Source: Ylistrum balloti (Eukaryota). From it: a stretch of DNA of 64,000 nt. The stretch's first letter is position 1, and the number at the start of each line of letters is the position of its first letter. Of this stretch, positions 21,166 through 60,141 are shown piece by piece. The notes below the pieces were generated by a model. That model was not told where the DNA came from and ran no database searches. It was given only the letters and a program-made list of their open reading frames with translations. The translations under genes were made by a program, and so were the position numbers. Location: assembly GCF_031769215.1 (NCBI RefSeq), contig NW_026781911.1:310001-374000 (forward strand), written 5' to 3'.

Positions 21166-24100
21166 GAAGATTATTTTGCAGGGAGTTATATAGAACACTG
21201 ACGAAACATACAATTATTACAAAATCAAAGTCAGACTCTAGTTACGTACATGTTAAAGTTGAATTCGTGAGGTTTTTGTCAGCACGATTTTACAGCTCAA
21301 TAAATTACAACATACTTATTATTCCTGGTTCAATGGAAGTCTGAATTTTATGGAAGAAGGTAATAAAATGTATTCGGACATTTGTTTCGCTCTTTGTGAA
21401 TATCGGAAAGGGATTGGCACAATTTTTAATACGTTCAGTTGGATTTTATTATATAGATAAATAATGATGCGGTCTTATGACACGTAATCTATGATTTTAC
21501 AGTCAATCCACGCAAAATAAAGAATAATGAAAAGAGGAATGAAATAAAAAAAATAAACCCAAAAGAATCATTCACATGGAGACGCCGTAAAACATTATAA
21601 GATTGAACAAAAGACACACAGGTGAATGGCGCCTTTAATGTCAATTTAGAGTTACAGTAGAGCCAAACAAGGAATTAAAGTGTATGGTACAGTTGTATTG
21701 TCCTAGGACTTGTCAGTGATGCACAGTCATTGTAATATAGAATGTTAAAGATACCAACGGTTTCGGAAGGGTAAACGTAACATGTGCTGAAAATTGAATA
21801 CATGTACAATGTAACATTGCAATCAAATCGAAATTTGATATGTATTCACAACCCAGGGATCGTACGTTGCTTTTGTTCTATCCTATCATTTAGTTTGTTC
21901 ATGTTTTGTATCTAAACTTAAATTTCATTACTGAAGATTGCTTTCAAAATTATCTTAAGATAAAATATAGGTCGTATAACTAATGGCATGACGTCGGTTA
22001 GGACTAATAATATTGATACACTATTACTACAAGATATCGATATCATGTACAGAACATGTGTTATATCGACATACAGTACATGTATAGAATAGTGGTCCAT
22101 GAAATATAAACAACAGGTTAAATAAGTACGAAAAAAGAACAAAACAAAATAAGAAAAGATAACTAAGTGCAAGTCGGCAATTCATACGTAAATTTTCACC
22201 AGAAATCGTGTGGAGATTTCTCTCTCCCCATCCCGGAAGTTTACATGATTTACATTTGTTATGTTAAACACATGTTAAAGGGAACACACCCTTATATTGT
22301 TTACACGTGGTGGTGTCGTCATCACATACTGATATGGGATGACTTTCTCTCTTTGTTTCCTTTACCTTTTTTTCATTTTCTAAACAATAAGATTGAAGAT
22401 TATTTTGCAGGGAGTTATATAGAACACTGACGAAACATACATTATTACAAAATCAAAGTCAGACTCTAGTTACGTACATGTTAAAGTTGAATTCGTGAGG
22501 TTTTTGTCAGCACGATTTTACAGCTCAATAAATTACAACATACTTATTATTCCTGGTTCAATGGAAGTCTGAATTTTATGGAAGAAGGTAATAAAATGTA
22601 TTCGGACATTTGTTTCGCTCTTTGTGAATATCGGAAAGGGATTGGCACAATTTTTAATACGTTCAGTTGGATTTTATTATATAGATAAATAATGATGCGG
22701 TCTTATGACACGTAATCTATGATTTTACAGTCAATCCACGCAAAATAAAGAATAATGAAAAGAGGAATGAAATAAAAAAAATAAGAGAAAAGAATCATTC
22801 ACATGGAGACGCCGTAAAACATTATAAGATTGAACAAAAGATACACAGGTGAATGGCGCCTTTAATGTCAATTTAGAGTTACAGTAGAGCCAAACAAGGA
22901 ATTAAAGTGTATGGTACAGTTGTATTGTCCTAGGACTCGTCAGTGATGCACAGTCATTGTAATATAGAATGTTAAAGATACCAACGGTTTCGGAAGGGTA
23001 AACGTAACATGTGCTGAAAATTGAATACATGTACAATGTAACATTGCAATCAAATCGAAATTTGATATGTATTCACAACCCAGGGATCGTACGTTGCTTT
23101 TGTTCTATCCTATCATTTAGTTTGTTCATGTTTTGTATCTAAACTTAAATTTCATTACTGAAGATTGCTTTCAAAATTATCTTAAGATAAAATATAGGTC
23201 GTATAACTAATGGCATGACGTCGGTTAGGACTAATAATATTGATACACTATTACCACAAGATATCGATATCATGTACAGAACATGTGTTATATCGACATA
23301 CAGTACATGTATAGAATAGTGGTCCATGAAATATAAACAACAGGTTAAATAAGTACGAAAAAAGAACAAAACAAAATAAGAAAAGATAACTAAGTGCAAG
23401 TCGGCAATTCATACGTAAATTTTCACCAGAAATCGTGTGGAGATTTCTCTCTCCCCATCCCGGAAGTTTACATGATTTACATTTGTTATGTTAAACACAT
23501 GTTAAAGGGAACACACCCTTATATTGTTTACACGTGGTGGTGTCGTCATCACATACTGATATGGGATGACTTTCTCTCTTTGTTTCCTTTACCTTTTTTT
23601 CATTTTCTAAACAATAAGATTGAAGATTATTTTGCAGGGAGTTATATAGAACACTGACGAAACATACAATTATTACAAAATCAAAGTCAGACTCTAGTTA
23701 CGTACATGTTAAAGTTGAATTCGTGAGGTTTTTGTCAGCACGATTTTACAGCTCCATAAATTACAACATACTTATTATTCCTGGTTCAATGGAAGTCTGA
23801 ATTTTATGGAAGAAGGTAATAAAATGTATTCGGACATTTGTTTCGCTCTTTGTGAATATCGGAAAGGGATTGGCACAATTTTTAATACGTTCAGTTGGAT
23901 TTTATTATATAGATAAATAATGATGCGGTCTTATGACACGTAATCTATGATGTTTACAGTCAATCCACGCAAAATAAAGAATAATGAAAAGAGGAATGAA
24001 ATAAAAAAAATAAACCCAAAAGAATCATTCACATGGAGACGCCGTAAAACATTATAAGATTGAACAAAAGATACACAGGTGAATGGCGCCTTTAATGTCA

Positions 24101-24859
24101 ATTTAGAGTTACAGTAGAGCCAAACAAGGAATTAAAGTGTATGGTACAGTTGTATTGTCCTAGGACTCGTCAGTGATGCACAGTCATTGTAATATAGAAT
24201 GTTAAAGATACCAACGGTTTCGGATATATATAAACGTAACATGTGCTGAAAATTGAATACATGTACAATGTAACATTGCAATCAAATCGAAATTTGATAT
24301 GTATTCACAACCCAGGGATCGTACGTTGCTTTTGTTCTATCCTATCATTTAGTTTGTTCATGTTTTGTATCTAAACTTAAATTTCATTACTGAAGATTGC
24401 TTTCAAAATTATCTTAAGATAAAATATAGGTCGTATAACTAATGGCATGACGTCGGTTAGGACTAATAATATTGATACACTATTACCACAAGATATCGAT
24501 ATCATGTACAGAACATGTGTTATATCGACATACAGTACATGTATAGAATAGTGGTCCATGAAATATAAACAACAGGTTAAATAAGTTTGCTAAAAAAGAA
24601 CAAAACAAAATAAGAAAAGATAACTAAGTGCAAGTCGGCAATTCATACGTAAATTTTCACCAGAAATCGTGTGGAGATTTCTCTCTCCCCATCCCGGAAG
24701 TTTACATGATTTACATTTGTTATGTTAAACACATGTTAAAGGGAACACACCCTTATATTGTTTACACGTGGTGGTGTCGTCATCACATACTGATATGGGA
24801 TGACTTTCTCTCTTTGTTTCCTTTACCTTTTTTTCATTTTCTAAACAATAAGATTGAAG
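21166..24859. repeat. Three tandem copies of an approximately 1.23-kb unit
   Basis: GAAGA(ttattttgcagggag) starts at 21166, 22395 and 23622, and the array ends at GAAG 24856-24859. The same spurious ORFs recur at 22167, 23394 and 24628. Confidence 0.97.
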
Positions 24860-26433
24860 CAAACAGAAGAAACAAAGAGAAACTTTACCCGGAAGAATTG
24901 TGTTTGAACTAATCCTAAAATAACAACTCCACTATAACGATCACATAAGCATACGAACTATATGTCATTAATTATTTATTTCTCGATAAAGACACGAAGC
25001 ATCCATTTTTGTAAAACGATAGAAATGAAGGGTAATGATCTTTAAAGCAGATAACTATTTATGTGTGTAATATATGAAATGTTAACTAGTTTTTTTTCAT
25101 TGTATTATCATATTAGACGTCAAAAACTTTGGTCAGTAAGTTTTTCCAGCTTTAGGCGACTTATCTCTAGATACACGTGTTCTATCGTACAACAAAAAAC
25201 ACATGGTTACATATTAAAATACGAAATATATAAAGATTAGAGAAACATTTTGTACTACATATAGCTACTACATATAGAAAGGCAATGGAGAGAGAGAGAT
25301 AGAGATCAATATGTTGGCTGTTGATGGTTTAAACTTGTCCATTTGTAATCTGAAGATTAAATGTCTACTGGAAATTTTCAGTGTACAGTAAATAGGTCAA
25401 GTAAGACCTTATTCTAGAATAGTTATTTTGAAGGGAGCTAAAGTTGTTTGTTTTCCACGTTATCAATCAGGTTTGCTACTGTGTTATTTGATAAATTTAT
25501 GTTGCAATAAATAAGTTTCAAGCTTGATTTTCCTTCCCATATGAAATGCATGTATATGTTTGTGTATATGTGTAATATGGTTGAATATTCAATAAATATT
25601 GTTTAAACTAACCAAACTAGATTATCGAACCACCAAGCCGCATATTCTTTATACAACTGAGGACCGGTTTCTGTAACAAGTCCATTACCGAATTGAATTT
25701 AGCATTGGAGAAGACGTCGTTACATCAAATCCGAATTCACTCAAGGAGAGCATTATTTTAGAAACGTAATTTAGATCAGAATTAATTTACATGTAATGGC
25801 TTAACCCTTCCATGCCTTTGTCTTGTTAACGATTTTGCCAACTGTAAACTGATGACTTATATGCTGCCAAGATTAAAACTTTCTGTTGTTCGTGAGAAAT
25901 TGAAAGAACTTGATGTTACATGTATATATTTCAGTCCATACTAAAATGAAAACAGAGTTAGAAGCGTTGTCCAGAGGAAGTGAATTACTGATTTTCAGAA
26001 TTGGTCAATGATGACCAAGAAAGGTACACGTATAGGGAAAGACAAAAGTATCTCAGTACGACATATTACATCCTACACTTTGTTAGTAAATTTTCAGAAA
26101 AAGAGTTGTTCACGGATAAATTACCTATTTGGACATAATGTCGTTTATCTGACTCAATGATAAGATCAATCTGATTTAATTAGGTTTTACGAGTAAATTA
26201 GCATGATAAAAATACGGTATGTTGTCATACTTCCTTATTTCATGTACATGTACTCGAGACACGAACTGTATGTTTCATCATACCTTTGGAAAGATTGCTA
26301 TCTGGCATGGACTTAAAACGTTCTAGCATATTAAAATTACATTTATCAGTTCAAAGGTAGGAATTAATGTATGTTCTAATAGTTCAATAGTATTGATTAC
26401 TGATAAGGAGTCCCCATAAAACGTTACCAAATA

Positions 26434-32790: not shown

Positions 32791-34650
32791 ATATAGAAGA
32801 GAAAAGTAGTGGATAAATAAAACAATGGTTTCTTTGCTTTCTTCTCGGTTTAAGGATCTGATTGTAACATCAAAATAATGAAAAAGGTCTTAAATAAAAT
32901 TGTTCTATTTATTTTCTCCAGTACGAAGATTTTTTTAACAGAGAAACACATGCAGCATTCTCAAATACAATATCAGCACATTTACATCGAATTAGAGTAT
33001 CTACTTTATCTGGAATAATTAACATTATGATGACATTATTTACACACTAATGAAAGTTATTAGCAATAGATTAAGAATACATTGTTTATTTACTTAGTAA
33101 ACATTCAATATAAAACTAAAATAAAATTAGAATACTAAAACATTGACTAATAAGGTGACACGGGGTATTTTGCTGTGTTTATGCGAAAACGAGCGGGTAT
33201 TATCTAAGGAACAATTTTTCATTTTTGTTGATTACTGGTGTGTAACTTGCAATGCTTTTAAATAATGCGTGTTATGTCGAAATATCTGTTTGGAAATGCA
33301 CTTTACCGCACAACATTAAAGAACCAAAAGAAAAAGGGAAAATAAGAGAAAACATATCACTTAAATTTACATTTCGACATTTTTGTTTTATTTACGCTTC
33401 TTAAAAAAGTGATAACCGTCATTAAATGACCGTTGTACACCCTGACGGCATAGCAAATCGGTGTGTCCAAACTTGTGGAAAAAGTTGTCACTACAATTTT
33501 GTTCGTAAGGTCAAGTAGAGATGATACCACACCACGTGTGTATTGTTACTATACTTCCTTGTAATCCAGATGTCACACGTGCAGAGATATTACACGAAGT
33601 ATAATTACGATATTTAAGACAATAACATATTGATTTCTAAATATAGGGAGATTTATCAACAGCAGAATCATACTTTACTAAAAAAAAAAACACATGCTGT
33701 TTATCTTTAGATGTAATACCATCCTCTGTGGTTCAAGTGTTAGATATAACCTACCACACCCATCTGCAAACAATTTGATATATACATCTGTAAACATTCG
33801 TGCGTGATGATATGTCCCTGTGACTAAAACTGTTAAAAAAACTGTTGACATATACAATATCATTCAACGCCCAAAGCAATACACAGGGAGGAAATAATTT
33901 CTGGTGGACAAGGCAAGTGAATATTTTATACCCATAGTTTGTACCCATTGCTGGTAGGCTTAAGTATCTCATTCTACTTTGAAATGTCCGAATTCAGATC
34001 AACAACTGCATTGAAAAAGAGAAGAGTGCACGATGATAACAAGAATATCATGTTTTATGTGTGAATACGATAAGAGATACCTTTCATACTGTTTCAAAAT
34101 ATGCGTTGTATGTAAAGTCAGTACGTACATTTTGTTTGAAGGTTTATACCACTTTTTGAATGTCATGTCATAGTTGATTTAATATTAATTTCCTTGAAGG
34201 TTGTCGACAGCTGACAACACATAGTTTCGAGAGCTTTGGGTTGATGCCAAAGACTGTAAAGAAGTTATGTAGTCGTTTTCTTGATTCTGTTGAGAAATAT
34301 ACACGTGTTCTTCCAAAATTACCAAATATATGAAAATTTATTTAATTATGAGGGTTGGTGCACCTTCCTTTCTAGGTTTCATATTTCTTTCGATCATTTT
34401 AAGTTTCCTCAGTCGCCTCTTACGTTTCAACATTTAGGCCCTTAGCAACACTGGCGAATCCCAGACGGAGCTGTATGAAGCAGTTTCATAGTTTGGCTCT
34501 ACCATATTTAATATAAATTGTGTATGAAAAGATGCTATTCACTAACATGTCTTCTATATTCCTTGACCGATCTGCAGATACATGTGTTCGATGTATTGTG
34601 GTTTTGTTGTAACATTGTTTTTTATTTTGAGGACGTGACATTGTGACATT

Positions 34651-37600
34651 CGGGTACGCTAACAGACAGCACAAACAATGAATCTGTCTGGAACGCTAAC
34701 AGACATCACAAACGATGAACCTGTCGGGCACGCTAACAGACAGCACAAACGATGAACCAGCCGGGCACGCTAATAGACACCACAAACGATGAACCTGCCT
34801 GGTACGCTAACAGACATCACAAACGATGAACCAGCCGGGCACGCGAACAGCAATCACAAACGATGAACCTGCCTGGTACGCTAACAGACATCACAAACGA
34901 TGAACCTGCCGGGCACGCGAACAGACATCACAAACGATGAACCAGTCTGGAACGCTAACAGACATCACAAACGATGAACTTGTTGGGCACGCTAACAGAC
35001 ACCACAAGCAATGAACCTTTCGGGTACACTAACAGACATCACAAACGATCAACCTGTCTGGCACGCTAACAGACATCACAAACGATGAACCTGCCGGGCA
35101 CGCTAATAGACATCAGAAACGATGAACCTGCCGGGCACGCGAACAGCAATCACAAACGATGAACCTGCCTGGTACGCTAACAGATAGCACAAATGATGAA
35201 CCTGTCGGGCACGCTAACAGACATCACAAACGATGAACCTGCCTGCCGGGCACGCTAGACATCAGAAACGATGAACCTGCCGGGCACGCGAACAGCAATC
35301 ACAAACGAAACGATGAATCACTAACGATGAACCTGTCGGGCACACTAACAGACATCACAAGCAATGAACCTGTTGGGCACGCTAATAGACACAACAAAAG
35401 ATGAACCTGCCTGGCACGCTAACAGACAGCACAAACGATGAACCTTTCGGGTACACTAACGGACATCACAAACGATGAACCTATCTGGAACGCTAACAGA
35501 CATCACAAACGTTGAACCTGTCTGGAACGCTCACAAACGATGAACCTGCAATGAACCTTTCGGGTACACTAACAGACACCACAAGCACGAACCTGCCGGG
35601 CACGCACACACAAACGATGAACCTGTCGGGCACGCTAACAGACATCACAAACGATGAACCTGTCGGGCACGCTAACAGACATCACAAACGATGAACCTGC
35701 CGGGCACGCTAATAGACATCAGAAACGATGAACCTGCCGGGCACGCGAACAGCAATCACAAACGATGAACCTGCCTGGTACGCTAACAGATAGCACAAAT
35801 GATGAACCTGTCGGGCACGCTAACAGACATCACAAACGATGAACCTGCCGGGCACGCTAACAGACATCACAAACGATGAACCTGTCGGGCACACTTACAG
35901 ACATCACAAACGATGAACTGTCGGGCACGCTAATAGACATCAGAAACGATGAACCTGCCGGGCACGCGAACAGCAATCACAAACGATGAACCTGTCTGGT
36001 ACGCTAACAGACAGCACAAACGATGAACCTGCCTGGTACGCTAACAGATAGCACAAATGATGAACCTGTCGGGCACGCTAATAGACATCAGAAACGATGA
36101 ACCTGCCGGGCACGCGAACAGCAATCACAAACGATGAACCTGCCTGGTACGCTAACAGACATCACTAACGATGAACCTGTCGGGCACACTAACAGACATC
36201 ACAAACGATGAACTGTCGGGCACGCGAACAGCAATCACAAACGATGAACCTGCCTGGTACGCTAACAGACATCACTAACGATGAACCTGTCGGGCACACT
36301 AACAGACATCACAAGCAATGAACCTGTTGGGCACGCTAATAGACACAACAAAAGATGAACCTGCCTGGCACGCTAACAGACAGCACAAACGATGAACCTT
36401 TCGGGTACACTAACGGACATCACAAACGATGAACCTATCTGGAACGCTAACAGACATCACAAACGTTGAACCTGTCTGGAACGCTAACAGACATCACAAA
36501 CGATGAACCTGTCGGGCACGCTAACAGACACCACAAGCAATGAACCTTTCGGGTACACTAACAGACACCACAAGCAATGAACCTGTCTAGTACGCTAACA
36601 GACACCACAAGCAATGAACCTGCCGGGCACGCTAATAGACATCAGAAACGATGAACCTGCCGGGCACGCGAACAGCAATCACAAACGATGAACCTGCCTG
36701 GTACGCTAACAGATAGCACAAATGATGAACCTGTCGGGCACGCTAATAGACATCACAAACGATGAACTGTCGGGCACGCTAATAGACATCAGAAACGATG
36801 AACCTGCCGGGCACGCGAACAGCAATCACAAACGATGAACCTGCCTGGTACGCTAACAGACATCACTAACGATGAACCTGTCGGGCACACTAACAGACAT
36901 CACAAACGATGAACTGTCGGGCACGCTAATAGACATCAGAAACGATGAACCTGCCGGGCACGCGAACAGCAATCACAAACGATGAACCTGTCTGGTACGC
37001 TAACAGACATCACTAACGATGAACCTGTCGGGCACACTAACAGACATCACAAGCAATGAACCTGTTGGGCACGCTAATAGACATCACAAACGATGAACCT
37101 GTCGGGCACACTTACAGACATCACAAACGATGAACTGTCGGGCACGCTAATAGACATCAGAAACGATGAACCTGCCGGGCACGCGAACAGCAATCACAAA
37201 CGATGAACCTGCCTGGTACGCTAACAGACATCACTAACGATGAACCTGTCGGGCACACTAACAGACATCACAAACGATGAACTGTCGGGCACGCTAATAG
37301 ACATCAGAAACGATGAACCTGCCGGGCACGCGAACAGCAATCACAAACGATGAACCTGCCTGGTACGCTAACAGACATCACTAACGATGAACCTGCTTGG
37401 TACGCTAACAGACATCACAAACGATGAACCTGCCTGGTACGCTAACAGACATCACAAACGATGAACCTGCCTGGTACGCTAACAGACATAACTAACGATG
37501 AACCTGTCGGGCACACTAACAGACATCACAAGCAATGAACCTGTTGGGCACGCTAATAGACACCACAAAAGATGAACTTACCTGGTACGCTAACAGACAG

Positions 37601-37930
37601 CACAAACGATGAACCTGTCTAGTACGCTAACAGACATCACAAACGATGAACCAGTCTGGAACGCTAACAGACAGCACAAACGATTGACCTGTCGGGCACA
37701 CTAACAGACATCACAAACAATGAACCTGTCGGGCACACTAACAGACATCACAAACGATGAACCTGTCGGGCACACTAACAGACATCACAAACGATGAACC
37801 TGTCGGGCACACTAACAGACATCACAAACGATGAACCTGTCGGGCACACTAACAGACATCACAAAAGACGAAACCTTCGAGCACGCTAACAGACATCACA
37901 AACGATGAACCTGTCGGGCACGCTTACAGG
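34651..37930. repeat. 37-bp minisatellite, about 88 copies, with higher-order variant blocks
   Basis: Unit acaaacgatgaacctgtcgggcacgctaacagacatc. It decays into degenerate units up to about 38060. Confidence 0.97.
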
Positions 37931-39054
37931 CATTATAAAAAATTTAAGCAATGAGTACACCAACATGCATAAAAACCGATGAAACCTTCAGGCATATATC
38001 AACAGACATCAGCGGACACACTAACAGGCACTTAAACGATTAAACCATCGGTCACGCCTAGAGAAAAACCAAGAAATATTTAAATACTGGAAGTAACCAA
38101 AAGGCACTAGATACTATAGAATCGCCAGTCAGTCACCCTAACATGCATCAAAGTAATGAAAGCGTCTGGCATTCAAATATGCTAATTGAAATGCAGGAAC
38201 AACGAAAACTTTAGATACAAACATCTAGATCACTATTTCTTCACTAGTCATTGCTTTTAAAAAAGGATTGTTTGTTGTCTAAATATAACGTAATTTCCGT
38301 GCGTGAGGTGGAGCAGGTAGTCTTACAAACCAGATTTTCCTGTTTTAAACATGTGTATAGAAAACTGATGATATCGTTGTATTACCTCATTCTCTAGCAA
38401 TTATTTATTTTAGACACGTACATTAAAAAGACATGTAACTTACTAAAGTTAGGTACAACTCAAATGTATGTAACATGGTATTAGTGACCATATGGAGCAC
38501 CCAAGTAATCGGTAACAATTAGTGTCCATACAGAATAGTGTCTTAGAATTTTCTAGAATAAAAAACTGTCTTTATCACTCGTGTCTTTATTTTCGAAGTA
38601 ATCTGCTCCTTTATCAAGACGCAAGTATTACATAAATTACATCACAGACATATAACATTTAAAAAGTATCTACAGATATAAAGTTAAATCGAGAGCAGTG
38701 TTGTAAATTTAGGTGTCTCGATAATCCCTTCGACCCTTTATCAGATACAAAAAGTCATCCTTAGTTATCAAAAATATGTTCAATCAATTTCGGTATGTCT
38801 TGTATGCAACGAAAACAATCGCATGTCACAGTACGAGAAAAGTAGTCTACCGGTTCATCTCGGCTACATTCTAAACGAGGAAATATAAATGTGCATATAT
38901 ATATATATATATAACAATACACGTAAATACACGATGTACATCGACTTACCAATTTATGACAACGGTAGATTAATACTAATAACATGATAGATGTTCGCAA
39001 TCAGTTAAAGTTTTGCCTTGTAGGTAGGGCGTAAACATTGTACCTACTGTCTTC

Positions 39055-44170: not shown

Positions 44171-45484
44171 TTATCAAAACAACTGATGATAACTTAATAA
44201 CCTAAAATCAGAATCGTTTCCCACTTAATTAATTTTTAGTAATAATTTTTTCTGTATTCAGCTGGTTTTTAAGCAGATGAATGTTGAATGTCATACTCTT
44301 CGTTTTCTTTTGACAAGAAAATCAGTGAATGAGTGATGATACACGTTAGATATTTGGTTTCATATCAAGGTATCAAGAACCTTAAGTTCAGTGAATATGT
44401 TATAGGAGTGTTGCTCTAAGCGTCGAATCATGTCCAGGATGTATAACATAAGATGCAAATAAAAGAACTGAGATTAAATTCGTTTATCCGGATACTCAGT
44501 TAGATTAGGGATCTACCATCAGATGTCATTAAAGGAAAGTAGTGTCCGGGTCCCAAATCCGGCAGCATTTGCTGTATTTGCTGTTTCATCGTCACAAAAT
44601 TACCACTGATAGTGTATCGACGTTGTAATTGACATTAGTCAGAGTAATAGTTCATTTTACCGAGTATTGTAATGTACGGAAATAATAACTATATTTAAAA
44701 ATTGTAAAATTTCCAAGTCCAATCTTGCATAAAGTATATCTCAACAATGAGTGTGGTTGTGGTTCCAAAAGAAAAAAATTAATGACCCATGGAGGTGTTG
44801 TGGTTAATTCATAACTACGCCTTCAGTTAAAGGAACATTAGTGTCTTTATGTCTGTTTTTAGTTATATCTGTCTAGACACTGACACACCCTTGAGAAATT
44901 TAAAGATCGAAACCAGCAAAAATATATTCTGGAAACAAGAAATCTTAGAAACATATTCTAGATACAAGCACAAAACTTACAAATATGTAGAAATATATTG
45001 TGAATACATATATCAGACTTAAAAGAAACCTACGCATCACTCCGTTGTCCTGGAAGGACGAAATAGCTGTATGATGCATTTTACTTCATTATTTGACTCC
45101 ATCTAACTCTAAATTTATAAGTGTTTTTACTCGTATGTCTTTTGTATCATATTTTACCATTAGACACGATAGCATGTTCCGTTTGCAAGCATAAATCATG
45201 TTGCTTTACAGGAAACGCACTTACACTAATATTATCGTTCTTACAAGTAGGTAGGAGTAAATTACTGTCAAATATAGCAACATCCTTAACTGCCATTTCA
45301 CTGTTAAGTTATATCATCGTTAGTCTTGTTTCTATACCATACAAGGAAAGAGGAATTGAAATAATAAATAATAATAGGCCGCTATGAATATTCATTTCAT
45401 TTTGGGATATGAAACTGGTCATGTTTTATGCTCGTAGCATACTTGTTGGTTACCGTTTTCTCATTTTTTTCACGTTACATTTCT

Positions 45485-45835
45485 TAATTGGACAGATCAA
45501 GATTTACATGTCGGGTGTCATTGATGAAACAGAATACGCTCATTTCAGGTCTTATTCTCCTGTTTCTGGAATCTCCGAATACTTTTATTCATATTGTTTA
45601 TAATTTCCCATAATCTTATTGAATGAGTATTTGAATTCCGGTTCTTTATATCCGGGTTTATATACAGTGAGGTTTTCGGACGAAGTTATGTTGAGGTCAT
45701 TGAATAGCAACAAACACAAGTTTGTATTCTCCGCCATATTTGTTTGTTGACGGATTTGTTCCCATTGACAAGTCAAATTATCTGAATAGCTGATTCTAAT
45801 AATGATAACTACTATTTTCATCCATGTTTTAATGT
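45485..45835. mobile_element. Highly decayed PLE fragments: + strand 3' tail next to a - strand RT remnant
   Basis: 45490-45550 resembles the tail at 30585-30650. The minus strand reads NQLFR* and KPGYKEPEFKYSFNKIMGNYK, similar to SQLIRY and QGY...F.KF.G.Y. Confidence 0.45.
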
Positions 45836-47411
45836 TCAATAAGAATATTTAAGCATGGATGTATAAAGAGTGAAACAATGAACAACCTATATATGTGAGT
45901 GGTATTTTAAACACTGAATGAAGGCAGCGTAATTTTATGTAGCTATTGTCGTTCTTAAAAGGGATCATATGCCTAGAACCAGCTATTGGAACTATTTGTC
46001 AAACAAACCATTAGCAACCAGCATTGGTGTTATATATGTGGGAGGAGTCTTGTACATGTTGAGATGCAGAACCGGCTCTGTGTTGACAACGTACTTTGGG
46101 TGTATTTATCATATCTTTGTGTAGGTAAACTTAATGCATGAAGTGACTAAATATCTAGTTATAGAACTGTATACTAGAATGTGTGTCACGCTAAATATAG
46201 ATATTGTAATACACGCATTGACATATACAATGATAGTTCCCAGTTCAATACTAATCATTTTCGCTCTTGAACATGTTCCCTTTGTCTGTGCTGAAAACAT
46301 ATCATTAATTTGGTATCCAAAGGGAACTACATACATACGTCGTCATGAAAAGTTTCAAAACGTGTCTGTGAAGCCGTCATGTTTTTTTATTTACTATATT
46401 GATAATGTGAAAATACTGTGGATAAAAGCGACTCATCCATTTATTTTAGGGATTAGAACCTTTCCATTTTTAATTGGTTCCACGATTATTTGAATACTAG
46501 CATAAACATTCATACCAATAGAATTTTAAGTGTGGATAATCAACACACTGCACAGACTTGCCATTACTAATAAACAACCTTACCATGTAAAATCAGTTAA
46601 TTAGTAAGAGTAATATGTCGCTACGCCTTGTAAAAATAATATGCCTAACGACGAAGTAGTCAATATAAATCGAACATATTGTGTACAGAAATATTGCCAT
46701 TCTTATTCCCATACTGTAAATTTCCTTTTCTTCTGTAATACGTGGGACGGTGTTACAGATAACTGTAATATAAATCAGAACAGTATACTAGTATTGCATT
46801 TGGTGGTAGCGAGATAAAGTATAATTTACTGACTGAATAAAAACTGACAAGAGCAGGAGAAACCATCTTTGATCCTTTTCTCAACCTGTTAGTAATATAT
46901 TCACACATAATCCTGGTCACAGAGCTTTTAATGGTGGGAACGAAATTTATTTTCGCCTGTATTTCTTTCATTGAGATATCACTAAATTGGAGCAGGCTCA
47001 TTTTCTGGTCTTTAATAGTCACCTTTTAAGCGCATAAGACGAATCAGATGAATAATAACTTCTAATTACGTTTAGATGAATACAAATACATTGGAACTTT
47101 TGTCAAATATTTGCCAAATTGTTCGAATTAAACAATGTATATCTCCGAAGAGAAAGGAACGACAGTTAACTATTGATAATGCCCACAAAATACTTAAGCA
47201 GTAACATTACGATCACCGACTTTGATATGTAAAGACAATTATAGCTGAATAAGTTTCCAAACCAATCTTGCATGGCTTTTCCATTTTCAGAATTTTCAGA
47301 ACAGCATACCAATTATAACAACTCGTTAAGAACATCAAAAGGCAAACACTTTGTAGTACAAAATAATGACAAAGGGCAGCTCAGAATAGCGACCTCGGCG
47401 ACTTGATGTGA

Positions 47412-47672
47412 TGTCTAAATTGGTTAATTCAACATTTAAGCCTCTTCAAGGACAGCAATTGTTCTCTACGGTCATGTTGCAAGGCAAACCGTGTCATAGT
47501 CCATGTCCGTTACTGTAGGAATCAGAAAGCGTGTTATGTTTGTAAAAAAGTCATTGTGCTATTCGTTCTTCATGCTGAACGCTGTGAAGATGAAAAGTGC
47601 GCTGTACTTTGCAGCCATAAAATAAAAACCAAACTGAGGCGTGACAACATGAGACGAGCCAATTTCCAGTGA
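47412..47672 (+). pseudogene. Stand-alone CBP/p300 TAZ2-like zinc finger, probably a pseudogene
   Basis: Stop-to-stop frame CLNWLIQHLSLFKDSNCSLRSCCKANRVIVHVRYCRNQKACYVCKKVIVLFVLHAERCEDEKCAVLCSHKIKTKLRRDNMRRANFQ*. The three H-x3-C...C...C zinc sites line up with TAZ spacing. There is no upstream in-frame ATG and two Cys ligands appear lost. Confidence 0.8.
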
Positions 47673-49011
47673 AGAAAGGGTAGAGCTACTGAGCACAGAA
47701 CCAGTCTGCCAGTCTTGTCCCCGGACACACCATTTCTATAACAAAAACACGCAGGAAGCACACCCTGAAGGCATGGAAAACAGAAAAAGCGTATAGAAGT
47801 TGAAAAAAAACCTGAAGTTGTAGAGAAGTAACCCTACAAATGGAGATATGGTGCAAGGTGCTCGACAAGATACAAAAGGAGACAAAACTGGTCGGTGCGT
47901 GTTTGTCAGCATATCAAGTACAGGTATTATTTTAAAAAGAAGTGGAAAAATTGACAAAAAGTCTTGAAACATCCTTAATTTGACGCTGTAAACATTTACC
48001 TTCTATATTTGTATGAGATCGGCAGATTTTTATTGCTATTAACGAAAATACCTTACATACATTATATATTAATAATATTTTCTTGATCTTGGCAATCAAT
48101 TCCGCCATCAATTTTCATATCGGAGAGTGACCATTTTATAAAGTAATATTTGTATGACATATATTGTCATTTTATCTTCTGCATTTAAAACCTATATCTT
48201 ATTTATACGTTTTATCTCAACGCATTTATGTCATCCACAAATTTGCTAAACATTAAGCCCGAGGAAATGTCTTAGTTCATAATAGCTTACAAAGATATAC
48301 AATAGCAATGGCGATATTTCATTGCAATATTTGACATCCTGCAATGCATGACGCCAAGTTTGTAATATTATTTAAGATTGTGTCAAACTAATGTATAGAA
48401 AGTTAATTAAACCAGTTTTTAAGAACAGCATATGCATTCTGCAGCCTTTTGAAATAAATACTAGACAAACTTATTCATTATTAACCAGACATAAATTTTC
48501 AATCGCTTTTGTGCAAAGTAGATTTTATAGAATATAAGAATTGTAATGTTTTTGTAGGTTAAACAAAGTTAATTCTAGTTATTGTTCTTCACATGGATTA
48601 CATAGGTTGTTTTGTCTGAAGGCGTCTCATAGATCTATTGTTACTTGACAGGCAATAGAATTGTGCTAGAATTATGGACATGCATCTGATTATGCCACAC
48701 GTCAATAGGCACACATTGTCCGATATTTCCCCTATTCATTTTTGCGGTTTGACCTGGAAATCAATTTTCATATATATATGATATTCTGGTTTTCGTCTTT
48801 GAGAAGTGAAGTCATACGTAGGAGTGAGGATATCCATGTGTCGGATTACCTTGGGAGGTAGACAGACCAGTGTCGATATCTATCTATACATGTATTGTAT
48901 CATTAATTAATTTTGTCCATATATTCTTGATTTCTTCTGTCATTCATGAACATGTGTCAAGGTTTAACATGTATAATATCAAGACTCGTACTTTATCAAC
49001 ATGAGAAATGT

Positions 49012-49125
49012 GTGGTCGGGTGACGCATTGGTAATACACATGCATGTACCGGGGTTCGATATCCGGCAGGGCCGTGAAAAGGCAATGGGTCATTAACCTG
49101 ACAACGTGGGTTTTCCTCGAGTTCT
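49012..49125 (+). mobile_element. tRNA-derived SINE head with a V-SINE-like core start
   Basis: A-box-like tggtcgggtgacgcattgg, B-box GGTTCGATATCC at 49053-49064, then cgtgggttttcctcgagt. Confidence 0.5.
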
Positions 49126-49261
49126 GTTTCGCATATGTTTTATAATGAATAGAGTCTGTGGGTCTCAGAGCTTTTGTGTGCGCGTGTGTGTAATATCATA
49201 TATAAACGTAATACATATACAACGTGCATTTGTTCGTTAGGATCCAGGACATCAATGTTAC

Positions 49262-49408
49262 NNNNNNNNNNNNNNNNNNNNNNNNNNNNNNNNNNNNNNN
49301 NNNNNNNNNNNNNNNNNNNNNNNNNNNNNNNNNNNNNNNNNNNNNNNNNNNNNNNNNNNNNNNNNNNNNNNNNNNNNNNNNNNNNNNNNNNNNNNNNNNN
49401 NNNNNNNN
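49262..49408. other. Assembly gap (147 N)
   Basis: Run of N. Confidence 1.
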
Positions 49409-51824: not shown

Positions 51825-52790
51825 AACTGAGGTACTTAATAGATCATCAGGTTGAGTTAGGTACTAAACAGGGTGAAATGAATTTGAGTTAGGTACTTAA
51901 TAGATCACCAGATTGAGTCAGGTACTAAACAGAGTGAAATGAATTTGAGTTAGGTACTTAATAGATCATCAGGTTGAATCAGGTACTAAACAGGGTGAAA
52001 TGAATTTGAGTTAGGTACTTAATAGATCACCAGATTGAGTCAGGTACTAAACAGGGTGAAATGAATTTGAGTTAGGTACTTAATAGATCACCAGATTGAG
52101 TCAGGTACTAAACAGGGTGAAATAAATTTGAGTTAGGTACTTAATAGATCACCAGATTGAGCCAGGTACTAAACAGGGTGAAATGAATTTGAGTTAGGTA
52201 CTTAATAGATCACCAGATTGAGCCAGGTACTAAACAGGGTGAAATGAATTTGAGTTAGGTACTTAATAGATCATCAGATTGAGTCAAGTACTAAACAGGG
52301 TGAAATGAATTTGAGTTAGGTACTTAATAGATCACCAGATTGAGTCAGGTACTAAACAGAGTGAAATGAATTTGAGTTAGGTACTTAATAGATCATCAGG
52401 TTGAATCAGGTACTAAACAGGGTGAAATGAATTTGAGTTAGGTACTTAATAGATCACCAGATTGAGTCAGGTACTAAACAGGGTGAAATGAATTTGAGTT
52501 AGGTACTTAATAGATCACCAGATTGAGTCAGGTACTAAACAGGGTGAAATAAATTTGAGTTAGGTACTTAATAGATCACCAGATTGAGCCAGGTACTAAA
52601 CAGGGTGAAATGAATTTGAGTTAGGTACTTAATAGATCACCAGATTGAGTCAGATACTAAACAGGGTGAAATGAATTTGAGTTAGGTACTTAATAGATCA
52701 CCAGATTGAGTCAGATACTAAACAGGGTGAAATGAATTTGAGTTAGGTACTTAATAGATCACCAGATTGAGCCAGGTACGACATAAGATA
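51825..52790. repeat. 61-bp satellite (dimer of 30-bp and 31-bp subunits), about 16 copies
   Basis: Unit tgagttaggtacttaatagatcaccagat + tgagtcaggtactaaacagggtgaaatgaatt. Older degenerate ~31-bp monomers continue to about 53320 and resume at about 55645-55715. Confidence 0.95.
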
Positions 52791-53324: not shown

Positions 53325-55645
53325 GGATTTTCACAGAGAATCTTGAAAAGTACGAGAACAAGACCATGTGTTCTGGAAGAGTAAAGCGTCTTCTATTTCA
53401 ACGACAAAAGCCATTTAAATTTTGGTCAATCCATGTAAGTAATGTCATGTCCTCAAATTAGAACAAGGTGTACAACAACGGAACCAACAGCCTAATTAAC
53501 GAGCATCAAACACGTCCAGCTTCATATCACAAAGAAACAGGATATTTCTCAATGATTAGAACAAGGTGTACAACAACGGAACCAACAGGTTAATTAACGA
53601 GCATCAAACACGACTAGCTTCATATCACAAAGAAACAGGATATTTCTCAATGATTAGAACAAGGTGTACAACAACGGAACCAACAGGTTAATTAACGAGC
53701 ATCAAACACGACTAGCTTCATATCACAAAGAAACGGGATATTTCTCAATGATTAGAACAAGGTGTACAACAACGGAACCAACAGTTTATTAACGAGCATC
53801 AAACACGACTAGCTTCATATCACAAAGAAACAGGATATTTCTCAATGATTAGAACAATGTGTACAACAACGGAACCAACAGTTTATTAACGAGCATCAAA
53901 CACGTCCAGCTTCATATCACAAAGAAACAGGATATTTCTCAATGATTAGAACAAGGTGTACAACAACGGAACCAACAGGTTAATTAACGAGCATCAAACA
54001 AGACTAGCTTCATATCACAAAGAAACAGGATACTTCTCAATGATTAGAACAAGGTGTACAACAACGGAACCAACAGGTTAATTAACGAGCATCAAACACG
54101 ACCAGCTTCATATCACAAAGAAACAGGATATTTCTCAATGATTAGAACAAGGTGTACAACAACGGAACCAACAGGTTAATTAACGAGCATCAAACACGAC
54201 TAGCTTCATATCACAAAGAAACAGGATATTTCTCAATGTTTAGAACAAGGTGTACAACAACGGAACCAACAGGTTAATTAACGAGCATCAAACACGACTA
54301 GCTTCATATCACAAAGAAACAGGATATTTCTCAATGATTAGAACAAGGTGTACAACAACGGAACCAACAGGTTAATTAACAAGCATCAAACACGACCAGC
54401 TTCATATCACAAAGAAACAGGATATTTCTCGATGATTAGAACAAGGTGTACAACAACGGAACCAACAGGTTAATTAACAAGCATCAAACACGACCAGCTT
54501 CATATCACAAAGAAACAGGATATTTCTCGATGATTAGAACAAGGTGTACAACAACGGAACCAACAGGTTAATTAACAAGCATCAAACACGACCAGCTTCA
54601 TATCACAAAGAAACAGGATATTTCTCGATGATTAGAACAAGGTTTACAACAACGGAACCAACAGGTTAATTAACGAGCATCAAACACGACTAGCTTCATA
54701 TCACAAAGAAACAGGATATTTCTCAATGTTTAGAACAAGGTGTACAACAACGGAACCAACAGGTTAATTAACAAGCATCAAACACGACTAGCTTCATATC
54801 ACAAAGAAACAGGATATTTCTCAATGATTAGAACAATGTGTACAACAACGGAACCAACAGGTTAATTAACAAGCATCAAACACGACCAGCTTCATATCAC
54901 AAAGAAACAGGATATTTCTCAATGATTAGAACAAGGTGTACAACAACGGAACCAACAGGTTAATTAACAAGCATCAAACACGACCAGCTTCATATCACAA
55001 AGAAACAGGATATTTCTCAATGATTAGAACAAGGTGTACAACAACGGAACCAACAGGTTAATTAACGAGCATCAAACACGACCAGCTTCATATCACAAAG
55101 AAACAGGATATTTCTCGATGATTAGAACAAGGTGTACAACAACGGAACCAACAGGTTAATTAACAAGCATCAAACACGACCAGCTTCATATCACAAAGAA
55201 ACAGGATATCTCTCAATGATTAGAACAAGGTGTACAACAACGGAACCAACAGGTTAATTAACGAGCATCAAACACGACCAGCTTCATATCACAAAGAAAC
55301 AGGATATTTCTCAATGATTAGAACAAGGTGTACAACAACGGAACCAACAGGTTAATTAACAAGCATCAAACACGACTAGCTTCATATTACAAAGAAACAG
55401 GATATTTCTCGTTGAGATCACTACGACAACTGAAAACTTGACCATAATTTTCATCAACACGCATTTTTTAAAATCCTGTGTTACGACTTCTTGTACGAAA
55501 ATCGCGATGATGGGAACAGGCTCTTGAATACCAAATCAATTGCAACATGTCAACATCATAGGTAGGGATGCAGAGATGCCTTTTGCTCTTCAGAAATAGA
55601 AAATTCACAATAGGGGAAATTGAAATTATCACGCTTATTACCAAG
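53325..55645 (-). mobile_element. Third PLE copy (5'-truncated) carrying an internal 98-bp satellite
   Basis: The minus strand at 55530-55640 reads KRDNFNFPIVNFLFL...LQLIWYSRACSHHRDF. 53325-53450 matches the PLE 3' tail. Confidence 0.85.
53452..55410. repeat. 98-bp satellite, 20 copies
   Basis: gaacaa(g/t)g recurs from 53461 to 55321 at 98-bp spacing, and the units are nearly identical. Confidence 0.97.
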
Positions 55646-58032: not shown

Positions 58033-60141
58033 CTGTAAAGATGGAAAGACGATAATTGCATTATGTATTTTATAAACAATATTTCAAACGTATTGGAAAA
58101 TTTATGATATCATGACTATTGATAACCAATCACACTTACAAGATTGTACAAAATGGTTGTACAAATGTACAAAAGACACATTTAAATCATCACCAATTAT
58201 AACAACAAAACCAGCTAAATCTTCATCACAGGATTATCATTAGTGTTATTACCATGTCATCATCACTATCCGAGTCTTCCCGTGGGAGTTGGAATACTGC
58301 TCCAGCCTGCAAAAGCATTTGGACGATAGCGTTGTGTCCTCGACCTTGGGCAAGCATGAGAGGTGTCTGTCCTCCATATGTCCTTGCATCGACCCTGACC
58401 TTGTAATCCTGGAGGAGAAATGCCAGGAGTTGTGTGTTGTTTGTTTCGGCAGCATAATGCAATACCGTCCTTCCGCTCTTGCCGTCCTGTAACAAAATAT
58501 TAATTTTATAATATTGGAAATGATTACTTGCATTGCTACTTTAAAGGTTAATTTGTATGTTTGTAATCCAATCTTGAATTGTCAAGACACCATTTTATTT
58601 CAAAACTGAATACAAAAATTACATACAGATATCGAAATCAACCCAGTGACCCGTTCTGTATACTGAATGAGGTTTACTTATACAGAAAAGTGTTTTCCAC
58701 ATGAAAATCAAGTGTACGTACCATTGTGTTAATGTCTGACCCTTTGGACAATAGTTGCTTCAACACAACAAAATGTGAACTCTCTGCCGCGACATGTAGA
58801 CAAGTCTGGCCATTGTAATTTCGAAGTTCCAAATTTTGTGGAATTTTCTGGTAGGGGATCTTGTATGAATTCTGCAGAGTTTCTTCATATGATACAGGTT
58901 CTAAAAGTGATCTGACAGTCTCGTGATCGCCATTTCTGGACGCAATGTGAAGTGGGGTGTCGCCCCTATGGTCGCGGAAAGTCACGTCAGCTCCAGCAAC
59001 GATGAGACGTCTCACAATATTAGTCATTTTCATCATCACAGCCAGGTGAAGCACGGTTTGCATTAAATCGTTTTGTAAATTTAGGAAACCAAAATGTGGG
59101 ACAATTTTGATAAAGTATAAACACAGGAGAGGCATTTCTTGAATAATTGCCGAATGAAGCTGCCTGTAAAAATAAGACAAAAACATATATATCATCTGAC
59201 AATATGAACGTTGTATTTGATGTTTAGTATTGTAACACATTGGTTTACGGTATGTCTTTACTTTTAATTAAGACCAAAAAAACCCACATCAAATGTAACC
59301 AATTACTATTTTTATTTGATAATCTATGTTTATTTCTATTGTTTTCATTAACTTCTGTTGGCCTTAGCAACGAAAGTCTCGGCCCATGGGAGTTACATGT
59401 GTACAGGTACAGATTGTACAAAAGACACACATGTGAATTTTAAAACTGTTTCTTCAACTCTCTGAAAGGACAATGCATACAGTTATTAATACATAACTAC
59501 ATTGTATATTGTTACTTTTGTTCCATTTGATAACCGGGAAGAATATTCAAAAGCTTGCCACAAGTTGCACATTAAAGGAAATGTCATGTGACAATCTAAA
59601 CCAATGAAATACGAGTATCTTGGCCAACGATCTAGGCGTCTTTCTGTACGCGTCCGGAGATCAAACTTAATTAAAACACTAAAGTTCGGTGCCCTTTTGT
59701 TCGGTGCCCTTTTGGGTCAAAATGAACGGCAGAAGTGATAACTTACGTGTCACCTTCTCCGTCCTGTTCATAAACAATGTCCTCTTGACTGACTACGGGG
59801 CTAGTGGAGAGACACTGCTTAGGTTCAACCCTGCTTTCCTCAGTTAACTCACAAAAGCTGGTCTTCCCAACGCAAGAATCAAGATGCATATTCTGAAACT
59901 GCTTCCCTAAATCCTGGCTTTTAAAACTATCTCCAATACCAGAGTCATATCGTTCAGGACTAGTAATAGCTCCTTTCTGTGGAAATGAATGGGCATCAAC
60001 ATGACAGAAATTACTCTTAAAATGCGGTGCACAGTCTGGTTCTAAATCGTCACATTCCAAATCGTTAGAATCCAAATTTTGGGTTATGCACATATTTCCT
60101 CCACCAATTTCGAGGTCATTGCAATTGCAATTAGTTTCCAT
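58015..60141 (-). CDS. NFKBIA: IkB / cactus-like NF-kB inhibitor, 4 coding exons, about 362 aa
   Basis: N-terminal DSGIGDS phosphodegron. Ankyrin repeats GDTQLHSAII, QTVLHLAV, GDTPLHIA, GQTCLHVAA, GRTVLHYAA and GQTPLMLA. Acidic PEST-like tail EDSDSDDDMDESFS*. All introns are GT-AG and in phase. Exact orthology among IkB paralogues is not resolved. Confidence 0.93.
58253..58486 (-). CDS. NFKBIA: IkB coding exon 3 (ankyrin repeats 5-6 and PEST)
   Basis: gttacag|GAC GGC AAG ... GAC ATG|gtaata, 234 nt. Confidence 0.92.
58722..59163 (-). CDS. NFKBIA: IkB coding exon 2 (ankyrin repeats 1-4)
   Basis: ttttacag|G CAG CTT CAT ... AAC ACA ATG|gtacgt, 442 nt. Confidence 0.93.
59747..60141 (-). CDS. NFKBIA: IkB coding exon 1 (signal-response domain)
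   Basis: caaaATG start. Ends EGD-AC|gtaagt, 395 nt. Confidence 0.9.

What the first reader, a model, noticed from the sequence alone, without database searches (positions are those of the whole stretch)
47412..47672. Orphan TAZ zinc finger (CBP/p300 TAZ2-like), missed by the ORF track, about 10 kb from IkB
Seen: H-LSL-F-KDSN-C-SLRS-C, H-VRY-C-RNQKA-C-YV-C and H-AER-C-EDEK-C-AVLCS. Established (CBP TAZ2 recalled from memory): HACQCRNANCSLPSCQKMKRVVQHTKGC...CPVCKQLIALCCYHAKHCQENKCPVPFCLNIKHKLR. It aligns almost without gaps. Two ligand Cys are changed by single bases (TTC for TGC, AGC for TGC). An RRL motif sits just upstream in another frame, and the TGA could be a CGA>TGA change. No ZZ, HAT or other CBP sequence was recognisable on either side, so this is a free-standing TAZ rather than a CBP exon in context. 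Inference: it is a decaying member of a TAZ-only gene family, or a retro- or virus-mobilised fragment. CBP TAZ domains bind activation domains such as RelA and p53, so an intact TAZ-only protein could act as a coactivator decoy. Its position near IkB may be chance.
Basis: partly seen in the sequence, partly recalled or inferred. Interest (0 to 1): 0.75.

Follow-up and report, generated by a model that had tools for sequence, protein, structure and literature searches.

The report
Dead TAZ2 zinc-finger gene relic
This stretch of scallop DNA really does encode a recognisable copy of the TAZ2 zinc-binding docking domain known from the CBP/p300 co-activators, but it is a broken, single-copy, non-functional remnant, so it is an ordinary pseudogene rather than a working coactivator decoy.

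Summary
Window 47412-47669 (+) is an 86-codon open frame that passes Pfam zf-TAZ (33.5 bits, cut-off 25) and matches solved p300/CBP TAZ2 chains (E 4e-12); no TAZ1 chain matched.

It cannot make a TAZ domain:
- An in-frame TGA (47409-47411) cuts helix 1.
- There is no in-frame ATG before residue 80, and no AG acceptor between that stop and the first zinc-binding His.
- The second zinc ligand of site 1 is Phe.
- The last Cys of site 3 is Ser, with a Cys one residue earlier.
- A second individual (run X1) shares these defects and adds a 10-nt deletion that stops the frame after residue 25.

The locus is single-copy at 80% DNA likeness or more. No ZZ, HAT, KIX or Creb_binding sequence lies anywhere in the 64 kb, and nothing similar turned up in viral contigs.

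No public protein exceeds 45% identity. The most conserved TAZ columns are kept preferentially. This argues that the fragment diverged under constraint as a lineage-specific paralogue and then died, rather than being a decayed copy of canonical CBP.

Origin (in-situ exon or 5'-truncated retrocopy) is unresolved, and expression could not be tested. The scan had earlier noted a different TAZ2-like domain, in a NIK-like kinase, elsewhere in this genome (s1-236921). Interest is low.

The parts
47379..47408 (+). Upstream continuation of TAZ2 helix-1 homology, in the same frame as the open frame. It ends at stop codons further upstream (around 47364-47369).
   Evidence: tblastn alignments of P0023 and P0017 run through the stop back to 47379/47382. 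The GC-richer island begins at about 47375.
47409..47411 (+). In-frame TGA inside helix 1. It lines up with the Arg of the 'QRC' motif of CBP/p300 TAZ2.
   Evidence: The independent X1 contig shows no difference here.
47412..47669 (+). 86-codon open frame holding the TAZ2-like domain. Zinc sites read H8/F12/C17/C22, H31/C35/C41/C44 and H54/C58/C63/(C67)S68.
   Evidence: Pfam zf-TAZ 33.5 bits; p300 TAZ2 E 4e-12; alignment A1.
47445..47447 (+). TTC (Phe) at the position of the first Cys of zinc site 1 (the site's second ligand).
   Evidence: This column is Cys in 145 of 146 homologous domains.
47610..47615 (+). TGC AGC: Ser at the canonical last Cys of zinc site 3, with a Cys one residue earlier.
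   Evidence: P0005 reads 'PCC' and P0039 reads 'PCY' at the same place.
47485..47495 (+). Site of a 10-nt deletion in the second individual or haplotype (run X1). The deletion shifts the frame into a stop right after residue 25.
   Evidence: read-laying table 4; effect on the frame computed.
47670..47672 (+). TGA that closes the open frame after '...KLRRDNMRRANFQ'.
47673..47930 (+). Purine/A-rich rest of the GC-richer island, with no recognisable coding homology. It may be the former C-terminal tail or 3' UTR of the dead gene.
   Evidence: GC is 0.41-0.45 here against 0.26-0.34 in the flanks, with AT skew up to +0.48. The tblastn extensions into it are low-complexity and cross stops.

Best explanation
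This is a non-functional relic (pseudogene fragment) of a divergent, lineage-specific TAZ2-type zinc-finger domain. It sits alone in a satellite-rich intergenic stretch of a scallop genome.

The ancestral sequence was a four-helix, three-zinc HCCC docking module of the CBP/p300 TAZ2 kind. It had already diverged far from canonical CBP while still under selection for the fold (inferred). It then lost function. Shown directly:
- a nonsense codon, or alternatively a frameshift, in helix 1;
- no start codon and no usable splice acceptor;
- a zinc ligand replaced by Phe;
- a 10-nt frameshifting deletion segregating in the population.

Today it does nothing as a protein. Whether the fragment is the last recognisable exon of a gene that died in place, or a 5'-truncated retrocopy of an mRNA that ended with a TAZ domain, is not resolved.
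For: A real TAZ2: Pfam zf-TAZ above its cut-off and only TAZ2-bearing chains in PDB.

Broken:
- The TGA at 47409-47411 lies inside helix 1, with homology continuing upstream of it.
- The only in-frame ATG is residue 80, and there is no AG between 47389 and 47439.
- It lacks 2 of the 12 canonical ligands. Of 146 homologous domains, 140 keep all twelve, 6 lack one and none lacks two.

Not under present selection:
- An independent contig (about 99.5% identical over 2.9 kb) carries the same TGA, TTC and AGC plus a 10-nt deletion at 47485, which ends the frame after residue 25.
- Differences per base are no lower in the TAZ stretch (2 in 291) than in the flanks (11 in about 2570 and 9 in 1549).

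Divergent parent rather than canonical CBP:
- Best identity to any of 1.84 billion representative proteins is 45%, and the median to 146 TAZ domains is 33%.
- The tree end branch is 1.75 changes per column against a median of 0.17, with no supported clade.
- Matches to the consensus fall with column conservation: 12/15, 9/17, 5/29 and 2/21.
- A uniform-decay model starting from a typical TAZ2 is rejected (LRT 10.9, p 0.012).

Isolated and single-copy: no other CBP-type domain occurs in the 64 kb, and depth is about 11 with one contig at 80% likeness or more.

The GC-richer island at 47375-47930 still stands out from the AT-rich flanks.
Against: - No RNA run holds the stretch, so transcription could not be tested.
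- The open frame of 86 codons with 10 of 12 ligands is better preserved than long neutral decay would give, so the death is either fairly recent or the window allele is the less damaged one.
- The Ser at the last ligand may be a tolerated ligand shift (Cys at the preceding residue, as in P0005 and P0039), which leaves only one certain ligand loss.
- The conservation-class test rests on 82 columns and a hit set biased towards TAZ-like sequences.
- Run X1 is held as contigs, so allele frequencies are unknown.
Confidence: 0.85

Rival explanations
1. Origin variant A: a 5'-truncated processed retrocopy of an mRNA whose coding region ended with a TAZ domain. The TGA at 47670 would be the parent's own stop, 47673-47930 its 3' UTR, and the A-rich patch at about 47930-47962 the remnant of its tail.
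For: - The island of higher GC is isolated, has abrupt edges at about 47375 and 47930, and is followed by an A-rich patch.
- There is no other exon-like homology on either side.
- There is no intron inside the domain.
Against: - The candidate target-site duplication (AAATAATGACAAA / AAAAATTGACAAA) scores no better than 43% of control window pairs.
- No parent was found: no protein exceeds 45% identity and there is no second copy at 80% DNA likeness or more.
- The A-rich patch is short and interrupted.
Confidence: 0.3
2. Origin variant B: a simple dead fragment of the host's own canonical CBP/p300 gene (a DNA or retro copy of the TAZ2 region) that has merely decayed neutrally.
For: - The nearest rows by tree path are canonical CBP domains (P0114, P0108), though only because they sit at the centre of a star tree.
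- The PDB best hits are p300/CBP TAZ2.
Against: - About 60% amino-acid divergence by neutral decay should have scattered stops and indels through 86 codons and removed ligands in proportion. Instead 10 of 12 ligands and 12 of 15 near-invariant columns survive, while moderately conserved columns are mostly changed. Uniform decay is rejected at p 0.012.
- No Creb_binding, ZZ or HAT remnant flanks it.
Confidence: 0.07
3. A live exon of an unannotated gene that encodes a working, divergent TAZ-only or TAZ-terminal protein.
For: - An open frame of 86 codons coincides exactly with the domain.
- GC is 0.42 against 0.33-0.35 in the flanks.
- Free-standing short TAZ or ZZ-TAZ2 proteins do exist in other animals: spider KAG8189092.1, hystricognath-rodent 'p300-like' XP_004845587.1 and porcelain crab KAK3871159.1.
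Against: - The in-frame TGA is shared by two individuals.
- There is no ATG, and no AG acceptor between the stop and the first His.
- Phe sits at a zinc ligand position.
- A 10-nt frameshift allele exists.
- No homologue was found among proteins of 47-150 aa by word search.
Confidence: 0.06
4. A gene fragment captured and moved by a transposon or a virus.
For: The neighbourhood is repeat-rich. It holds satellites at 34.6-37.9, 51.8-52.8 and 53.5-55.4 kb, and very high-copy 70-nt repeats at 45047-45116 and 45472-45544.
Against: - The TAZ island and its 1.8-kb flanks are single-copy in X1 (depth about 11, one contig).
- No terminal repeats bracket it.
- No TE-type ORF lies next to it.
- A viral-contig scan with the alignment profile found no relative.
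Confidence: 0.03

Closest known systems
TAZ2 domain of CBP/p300 (Pfam PF02135 zf-TAZ; e.g. PDB 3io2, 3t92, 2ka6)
   Same: - The same helix order and the same HCCC-HCCC-HCCC spacing.
- Aligned over residues 7-81 with one 2-residue gap.
- 37-41% identity to canonical TAZ2.
- The basic 'IK.KLR' helix-4 end is kept.
   Different: - Not embedded in a CBP/p300 gene: no HAT, ZZ, KIX, bromodomain or Creb_binding nearby.
- One extra residue before the first His.
- The near-invariant 'KMKR' reads 'KANR'.
- Phe replaces a zinc-site-1 Cys, and the last zinc-site-3 Cys is displaced or lost.
- The reading frame is broken.
Free-standing short TAZ or ZZ-TAZ2 proteins of other animals: 'histone acetyltransferase p300-like' of hystricognath rodents (XP_004845587.1, 407 aa, 2x ZZ-TAZ2), Oedothorax gibbosus KAG8189092.1 (337 aa), Petrolisthes cinctipes KAK3871159.1 (360 aa), and unnamed environmental proteins such as P0005 (293 aa, single TAZ)
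   Same: - TAZ2-type domains outside a full CBP/p300 architecture.
- They are the best-scoring hits of the exhaustive search.
- P0005 and P0039 share the Cys one residue before the canonical last ligand.
   Different: - Those are intact predicted proteins with all or 11 of 12 ligands.
- Identity to the window fragment is only 32-45%, and no supported clade joins them.
- None is from a mollusc as far as their names show.
TAZ2-like domain of the mollusc NIK-like kinase noted earlier in this same genome (s1-236921)
   Same: A divergent TAZ2-type domain outside CBP/p300 in the same scallop genome, in a gene of the NF-kB signalling sphere.
   Different: - That domain is reported as part of a conserved, apparently live kinase gene.
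- No kinase-bearing protein appeared among the 123 hits at E <= 0.001, so it is not a close parent of this relic.
- I could not compare the two sequences directly.
Plant BTB-and-TAZ (BT) proteins (from general knowledge, not tested)
   Same: They show that the TAZ fold is reused outside CBP/p300. The nearest Atlas clusters for this query are small TAZ proteins, commonest in Streptophyta and Nematoda.
   Different: They have a different architecture (BTB + TAZ + CaM-binding) and belong to a different kingdom. No specific similarity was found.

Membership tests
zf-TAZ (PF02135), TAZ2 subtype | Sequence match to the family profile above the curated threshold | tested here: met
   33.5 bits against a cut-off of 25, profile positions 9-72 of 72.
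zf-TAZ (PF02135), TAZ2 subtype | Closer to TAZ2 than to TAZ1 | tested here: met
   All 15 PDB matches at E <= 1 are chains that carry TAZ2; no TAZ1 chain is listed.
zf-TAZ (PF02135), TAZ2 subtype | Three complete HCCC zinc sites (12 ligands) | tested here: not met
   The ligand string is HFCC-HCCC-HCCS. 140 of 146 homologues have 12/12 and none lacks two. A Cys at the residue before the last ligand might substitute in site 3.
zf-TAZ (PF02135), TAZ2 subtype | Four-helix TAZ fold | not tested
   No structure was predicted. A model built on a TAZ alignment would not show whether this broken copy folds.
Functional protein-coding gene or exon | Uninterrupted frame over the whole domain, with a start codon or an in-frame splice acceptor | tested here: not met
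   TGA at 47409-47411 lies inside helix 1. The only in-frame ATG is residue 80. There is no AG between 47389 and 47439.
Functional protein-coding gene or exon | Purifying selection or an intact frame across individuals | tested here: not met
   The X1 contig has a 10-nt deletion at 47485 that gives a stop after residue 25. Variant density is no lower than in the flanks.
Functional protein-coding gene or exon | Transcription | not testable with these tools
   Only one run holds the stretch, and it is not on record as RNA.
CBP/p300 gene (KAT3) | TAZ2 flanked by HAT and ZZ upstream and by the Q-rich/Creb_binding (NCBD) region downstream | tested here: not met
   tblastn with proteins carrying HAT_KAT11, ZZ, KIX and Creb_binding (P0114, P0108, P0093, P0059, P0064) finds only the TAZ stretch in 64 kb.
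Processed (retro) pseudogene | Poly(A) remnant and target-site duplications flanking an intron-less cDNA copy of an identifiable parent | tested here: inconclusive
   There is an A-rich patch at about 47930-47962. The best flanking direct repeat is at chance level. No parent was found.
Transposon- or virus-carried gene fragment | Multiple copies, terminal repeats, element genes or viral relatives | tested here: not met
   Single-copy depth, no bracketing repeats, and a blank viral-contig scan.

The most novel reading that the evidence does not exclude
The relic is the last trace of a pectinid- or bivalve-specific free-standing TAZ2 gene that once sat next to IkB. Intact orthologues or paralogues of that gene, so far unannotated, still work in other bivalves as docking or decoy proteins for Rel/NF-kB-type activation domains. 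Together with the TAZ-bearing NIK-like kinase of the same genome, this would point to a mollusc-specific reuse of the TAZ2 fold in NF-kB signalling.
Probability: 0.05. Interest if true: 0.55.

Novelty: new member of a known kind. Interest (0 to 1): 0.15.

Why it matters
It matters little in itself. It is one more pseudogene, and the decoy idea cannot apply to a copy that cannot be translated.

It has modest value in two ways. First, it shows that a TAZ2-type domain once existed in this lineage that was far from canonical CBP, which adds to scattered evidence (spider, crab, hystricognath rodents, and the NIK-like kinase of this genome) that the TAZ2 module is occasionally duplicated out of CBP/p300. 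Second, it marks a locus where an intact gene might be looked for in other bivalves.

Tried and rejected
- **Word-index protein search with the 86-aa frame:** no candidate. It only sees proteins of 47-150 aa, so it says nothing about longer relatives.
- **Other CBP parts in the window:** weak recurrent tblastn matches at 16349-16474 and in the 1.23-kb repeats at 22.2, 23.4 and 24.7 kb were translated and are chance, not TAZ.
- **tblastn extensions past the TGA at 47670:** these align only low-complexity Q/P-rich tails and cross further stops, so I did not accept them as homology.
- **Target-site duplication for a retrocopy:** at chance level.
- **Kinase link to the earlier NIK-like/TAZ note:** no hit carries a kinase motif or a Pkinase domain.
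- **Sources of the nearest hits:** P0005 and P0011 come from unnamed environmental or Logan contigs, so no taxon could be assigned.
- **Tree against 146 TAZ domains:** star-like, with the window sequence on a very long branch, so no parent could be named.
- **Literature:** two full-text searches gave nothing on TAZ-only paralogues in molluscs. The first was badly designed; the second gave no relevant paper.
- **Earlier findings by sequence and by relatives:** blank.
- **Orthologous loci of other scallops:** I did not try to reach these through the IkB neighbour. Its longest exon ORF is 188 aa, so the length window of the protein search (up to 329 aa) would probably miss the roughly 380-aa full-length protein.
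- **Structure prediction:** not run, because it would not bear on function for a broken frame.

Full report
**Observation.** Translating the + strand in the frame that begins at 47412 gives an 86-codon open frame bounded by TGA at 47409-47411 and TGA at 47670-47672. Pfam zf-TAZ matches it at 33.5 bits (curated cut-off 25; E 5.8e-8), covering profile positions 9-72 of 72. phmmer against all PDB chains gives 15 matches, all p300/CBP chains that carry TAZ2. The best is 3io2_A at E 4.4e-12, aligned over residues 7-81 with a single 2-residue gap, and no TAZ1 chain appears. A language-model look-up also lands on TAZ clusters at 0.90. The mechanical ORF list shows only a 38-aa GTG-started piece, because the frame has no start codon. 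This explains why an ORF track missed it.

**Anatomy and defects.** The only in-frame ATG is residue 80. Between 47389 and 47439 there is no AG, so no splice acceptor can bring a reading frame into the domain downstream of the TGA at 47409 and upstream of the first zinc-binding His at 47433. Homology to helix 1 of TAZ2 continues upstream of that TGA in the same frame to about 47379, and the TGA lines up with the Arg of the 'QRC' motif. I cannot decide between a nonsense change and a frameshift, and either way helix 1 is cut.

The first Cys of zinc site 1 (the site's second ligand) is Phe (TTC, 47445-47447). The last Cys of zinc site 3 is Ser (AGC, 47613-47615), with a Cys one residue earlier. 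Among 146 TAZ domains cut from the database hits, 140 have all twelve ligands, six lack one and none lacks two. Two of the nearest hits (P0005 'PCC', P0039 'PCY') also carry the earlier Cys, so the site-3 change may be a shifted ligand rather than a loss. The near-invariant 'KMKR' reads 'KANR', and there is one extra residue before the first His.

**A second individual.** Only one public run holds the stretch. It is kept as contigs and is not on record as RNA, so expression could not be tested. Laid on 44800-49200 at 80% likeness, it gives one 5.4-kb contig over 44800-47660, with 13 substitutions and 22 gap letters, and another over 47652-49200. It is therefore another individual or haplotype of the same species, about 99.5% identical.

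That contig shows no difference at the TGA, the TTC or the AGC. Inside the TAZ frame it has 47435 T>C (synonymous), 47538 G>A (Val to Ile) and a 10-nt deletion at 47485. The deletion runs the frame into a stop right after residue 25 and removes zinc sites 2 and 3. Differences per base are no lower in the TAZ stretch (2 in 291) than in the flanks (11 in about 2570; 9 in 1549). Depth across 45.6-49.2 kb is flat at about 9.5-11.6, with one contig. The locus is therefore single-copy at this likeness. By contrast, two 70-nt patches at 45047-45116 and 45472-45544 are extremely high-copy.

**Context.** tblastn of all 133 retrieved proteins against the window finds only the TAZ stretch. These proteins include ones carrying HAT_KAT11, ZZ, KIX and Creb_binding domains. 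The few weak recurrent matches elsewhere were translated and are chance. The flanks have no convincing coding ORFs and no bracketing repeats. The relic sits between satellite arrays: 37-bp units at 34650-37933, 61-bp units at 51830-52779 and 98-bp units at 53457-55410.

A fine GC profile shows an island of GC 0.41-0.45 from about 47375 to 47930, against 0.26-0.34 on both sides. Its second half is purine-rich and has no recognisable homology.

The IkB-like gene is real. It has ankyrin repeats (Ank_2 at 1e-30), matches IkB-alpha chain 1nfi_E at E 1e-23 over one long stretch, and has a DSGIGDS motif in the first exon. However, it lies 10.5 kb away on the opposite strand, convergent with the relic. 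Nothing links the two.

**Relatives.** The word-index search found no candidate among proteins of 47-150 aa. The exhaustive phmmer search of 1.84 billion representatives found 123 proteins at E <= 0.001, with a best identity of 45%. The highest scores belong to proteins with two or three TAZ2 repeats or ZZ-TAZ2 repeats:
- a spider protein, Oedothorax gibbosus KAG8189092.1;
- 'histone acetyltransferase p300-like' of hystricognath rodents, XP_004845587.1 and relatives;
- a porcelain-crab protein, KAK3871159.1;
- unnamed environmental proteins.

Free-standing TAZ2 proteins are therefore not new as a kind. None of the named hits is from a mollusc, and none carries a kinase. The TAZ2-like domain of the NIK-like kinase that this scan noted elsewhere in this genome (s1-236921) is therefore not a close parent. 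A scan of viral contigs with an alignment profile found no relative. In a tree of 147 domains the window sequence has an end branch of 1.75 changes per column (median 0.17) and sits in no supported clade.

**What kind of ancestor.** Identity to the consensus depends strongly on column conservation:

| Column conservation | Window matches to consensus |
|---|---|
| >= 90% | 12 of 15 |
| 70-90% | 9 of 17 |
| 50-70% | 5 of 29 |
| < 50% | 2 of 21 |

Real domains retain 98%, 79%, 62% and 36% in these classes. A model in which a typical TAZ2 lost residues uniformly is rejected (LRT 10.9, 3 d.f., p 0.012). The core is over-retained and the periphery over-replaced. Most of the divergence was therefore accumulated under constraint on the fold, in a divergent paralogue. 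Only a modest part is neutral decay: one stop, one or two ligand changes, 'KMKR' to 'KANR', and a segregating indel. This is inference from 82 columns and a biased hit set, but it agrees with the survival of an 86-codon open frame and a GC content (0.42) still above the flanks (0.33-0.35).

**Origin.** Two readings remain.
- A gene that died in place, of which only this exon is still recognisable.
- A 5'-truncated retrocopy of an mRNA ending in a TAZ domain. On this reading the TGA at 47670 is the native stop, 47673-47930 is the 3' UTR, and an A-rich patch follows.

The candidate target-site duplication is no better than 43% of control pairs and no parent was found, so I leave this open, at roughly 3 in 10 for the retrocopy.

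**Verdict.** Its reading 'decaying free-standing TAZ' is right as far as it goes. A gene family, mobilisation, a decoy function and a link to IkB have no support here. It is a new instance of a known kind of thing (a pseudogenised copy of a known domain) and of low interest.

The N run at 49262-49408 was left untouched, and no contig was taken for human.

Noticed in passing
window 58208-60141 (-): An IkB/cactus-like gene. The first coding exon (59746-60141) carries a DSGIGDS phospho-degron-like motif. An ankyrin exon (about 58677-59100) matches IkB-alpha 1nfi_E at E 1e-23, and a further ankyrin/acidic-tail exon lies around 58298-58453.
   Followed up: partly
window 45047-45116 and 45472-45544: Two roughly 70-nt patches are extremely high-copy in run X1: summed contig depth reaches about 11,000, more than 120 contigs are involved, and many have loose ends. 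They are probably pieces of a short interspersed or MITE-like repeat.
   Followed up: no
window 34650-37933: A 37-bp satellite of about 88 copies at 81% matches, GC-rich (0.45-0.48) with strong AT skew.
   Followed up: no
window 51830-52779 and 53457-55410: A 61-bp satellite (15.6 copies, 96% matches) and a 98-bp satellite (20 copies, 97% matches). The second is the array another first-stage note (s1-262854) derives from a retroelement reverse transcriptase. I confirmed only that the array exists.
   Followed up: partly
window 22167-24912: At least three tandem copies of a roughly 1.23-kb unit, each with an identical 87-94-aa ORF that has no recognised homology.
   Followed up: no
window 1821-4761: Minisatellite arrays that read as long repetitive ORFs on both strands ('PRPTTLVICIY...' and 'LPYLSITLLS...'). 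They are almost certainly non-coding repeats.
   Followed up: no
window 7029-7340 (+): An exon-like ORF with an ion-channel pore-helix look ('...FNDILRALVVLFELTVVNQWHDI...'). This is the two-pore-channel exon mentioned in another first-stage note (s1-262795).
   Followed up: no
hits P0001, P0002, P0085 (not in the window): Short proteins made only of ZZ-TAZ2 or TAZ2 repeats are annotated in a spider, in several hystricognath rodents (a conserved 406-407-aa 'p300-like' protein with 2x ZZ-TAZ2) and in a porcelain crab. These partial CBP/p300 duplicates look intact and may deserve their own study.
   Followed up: partly
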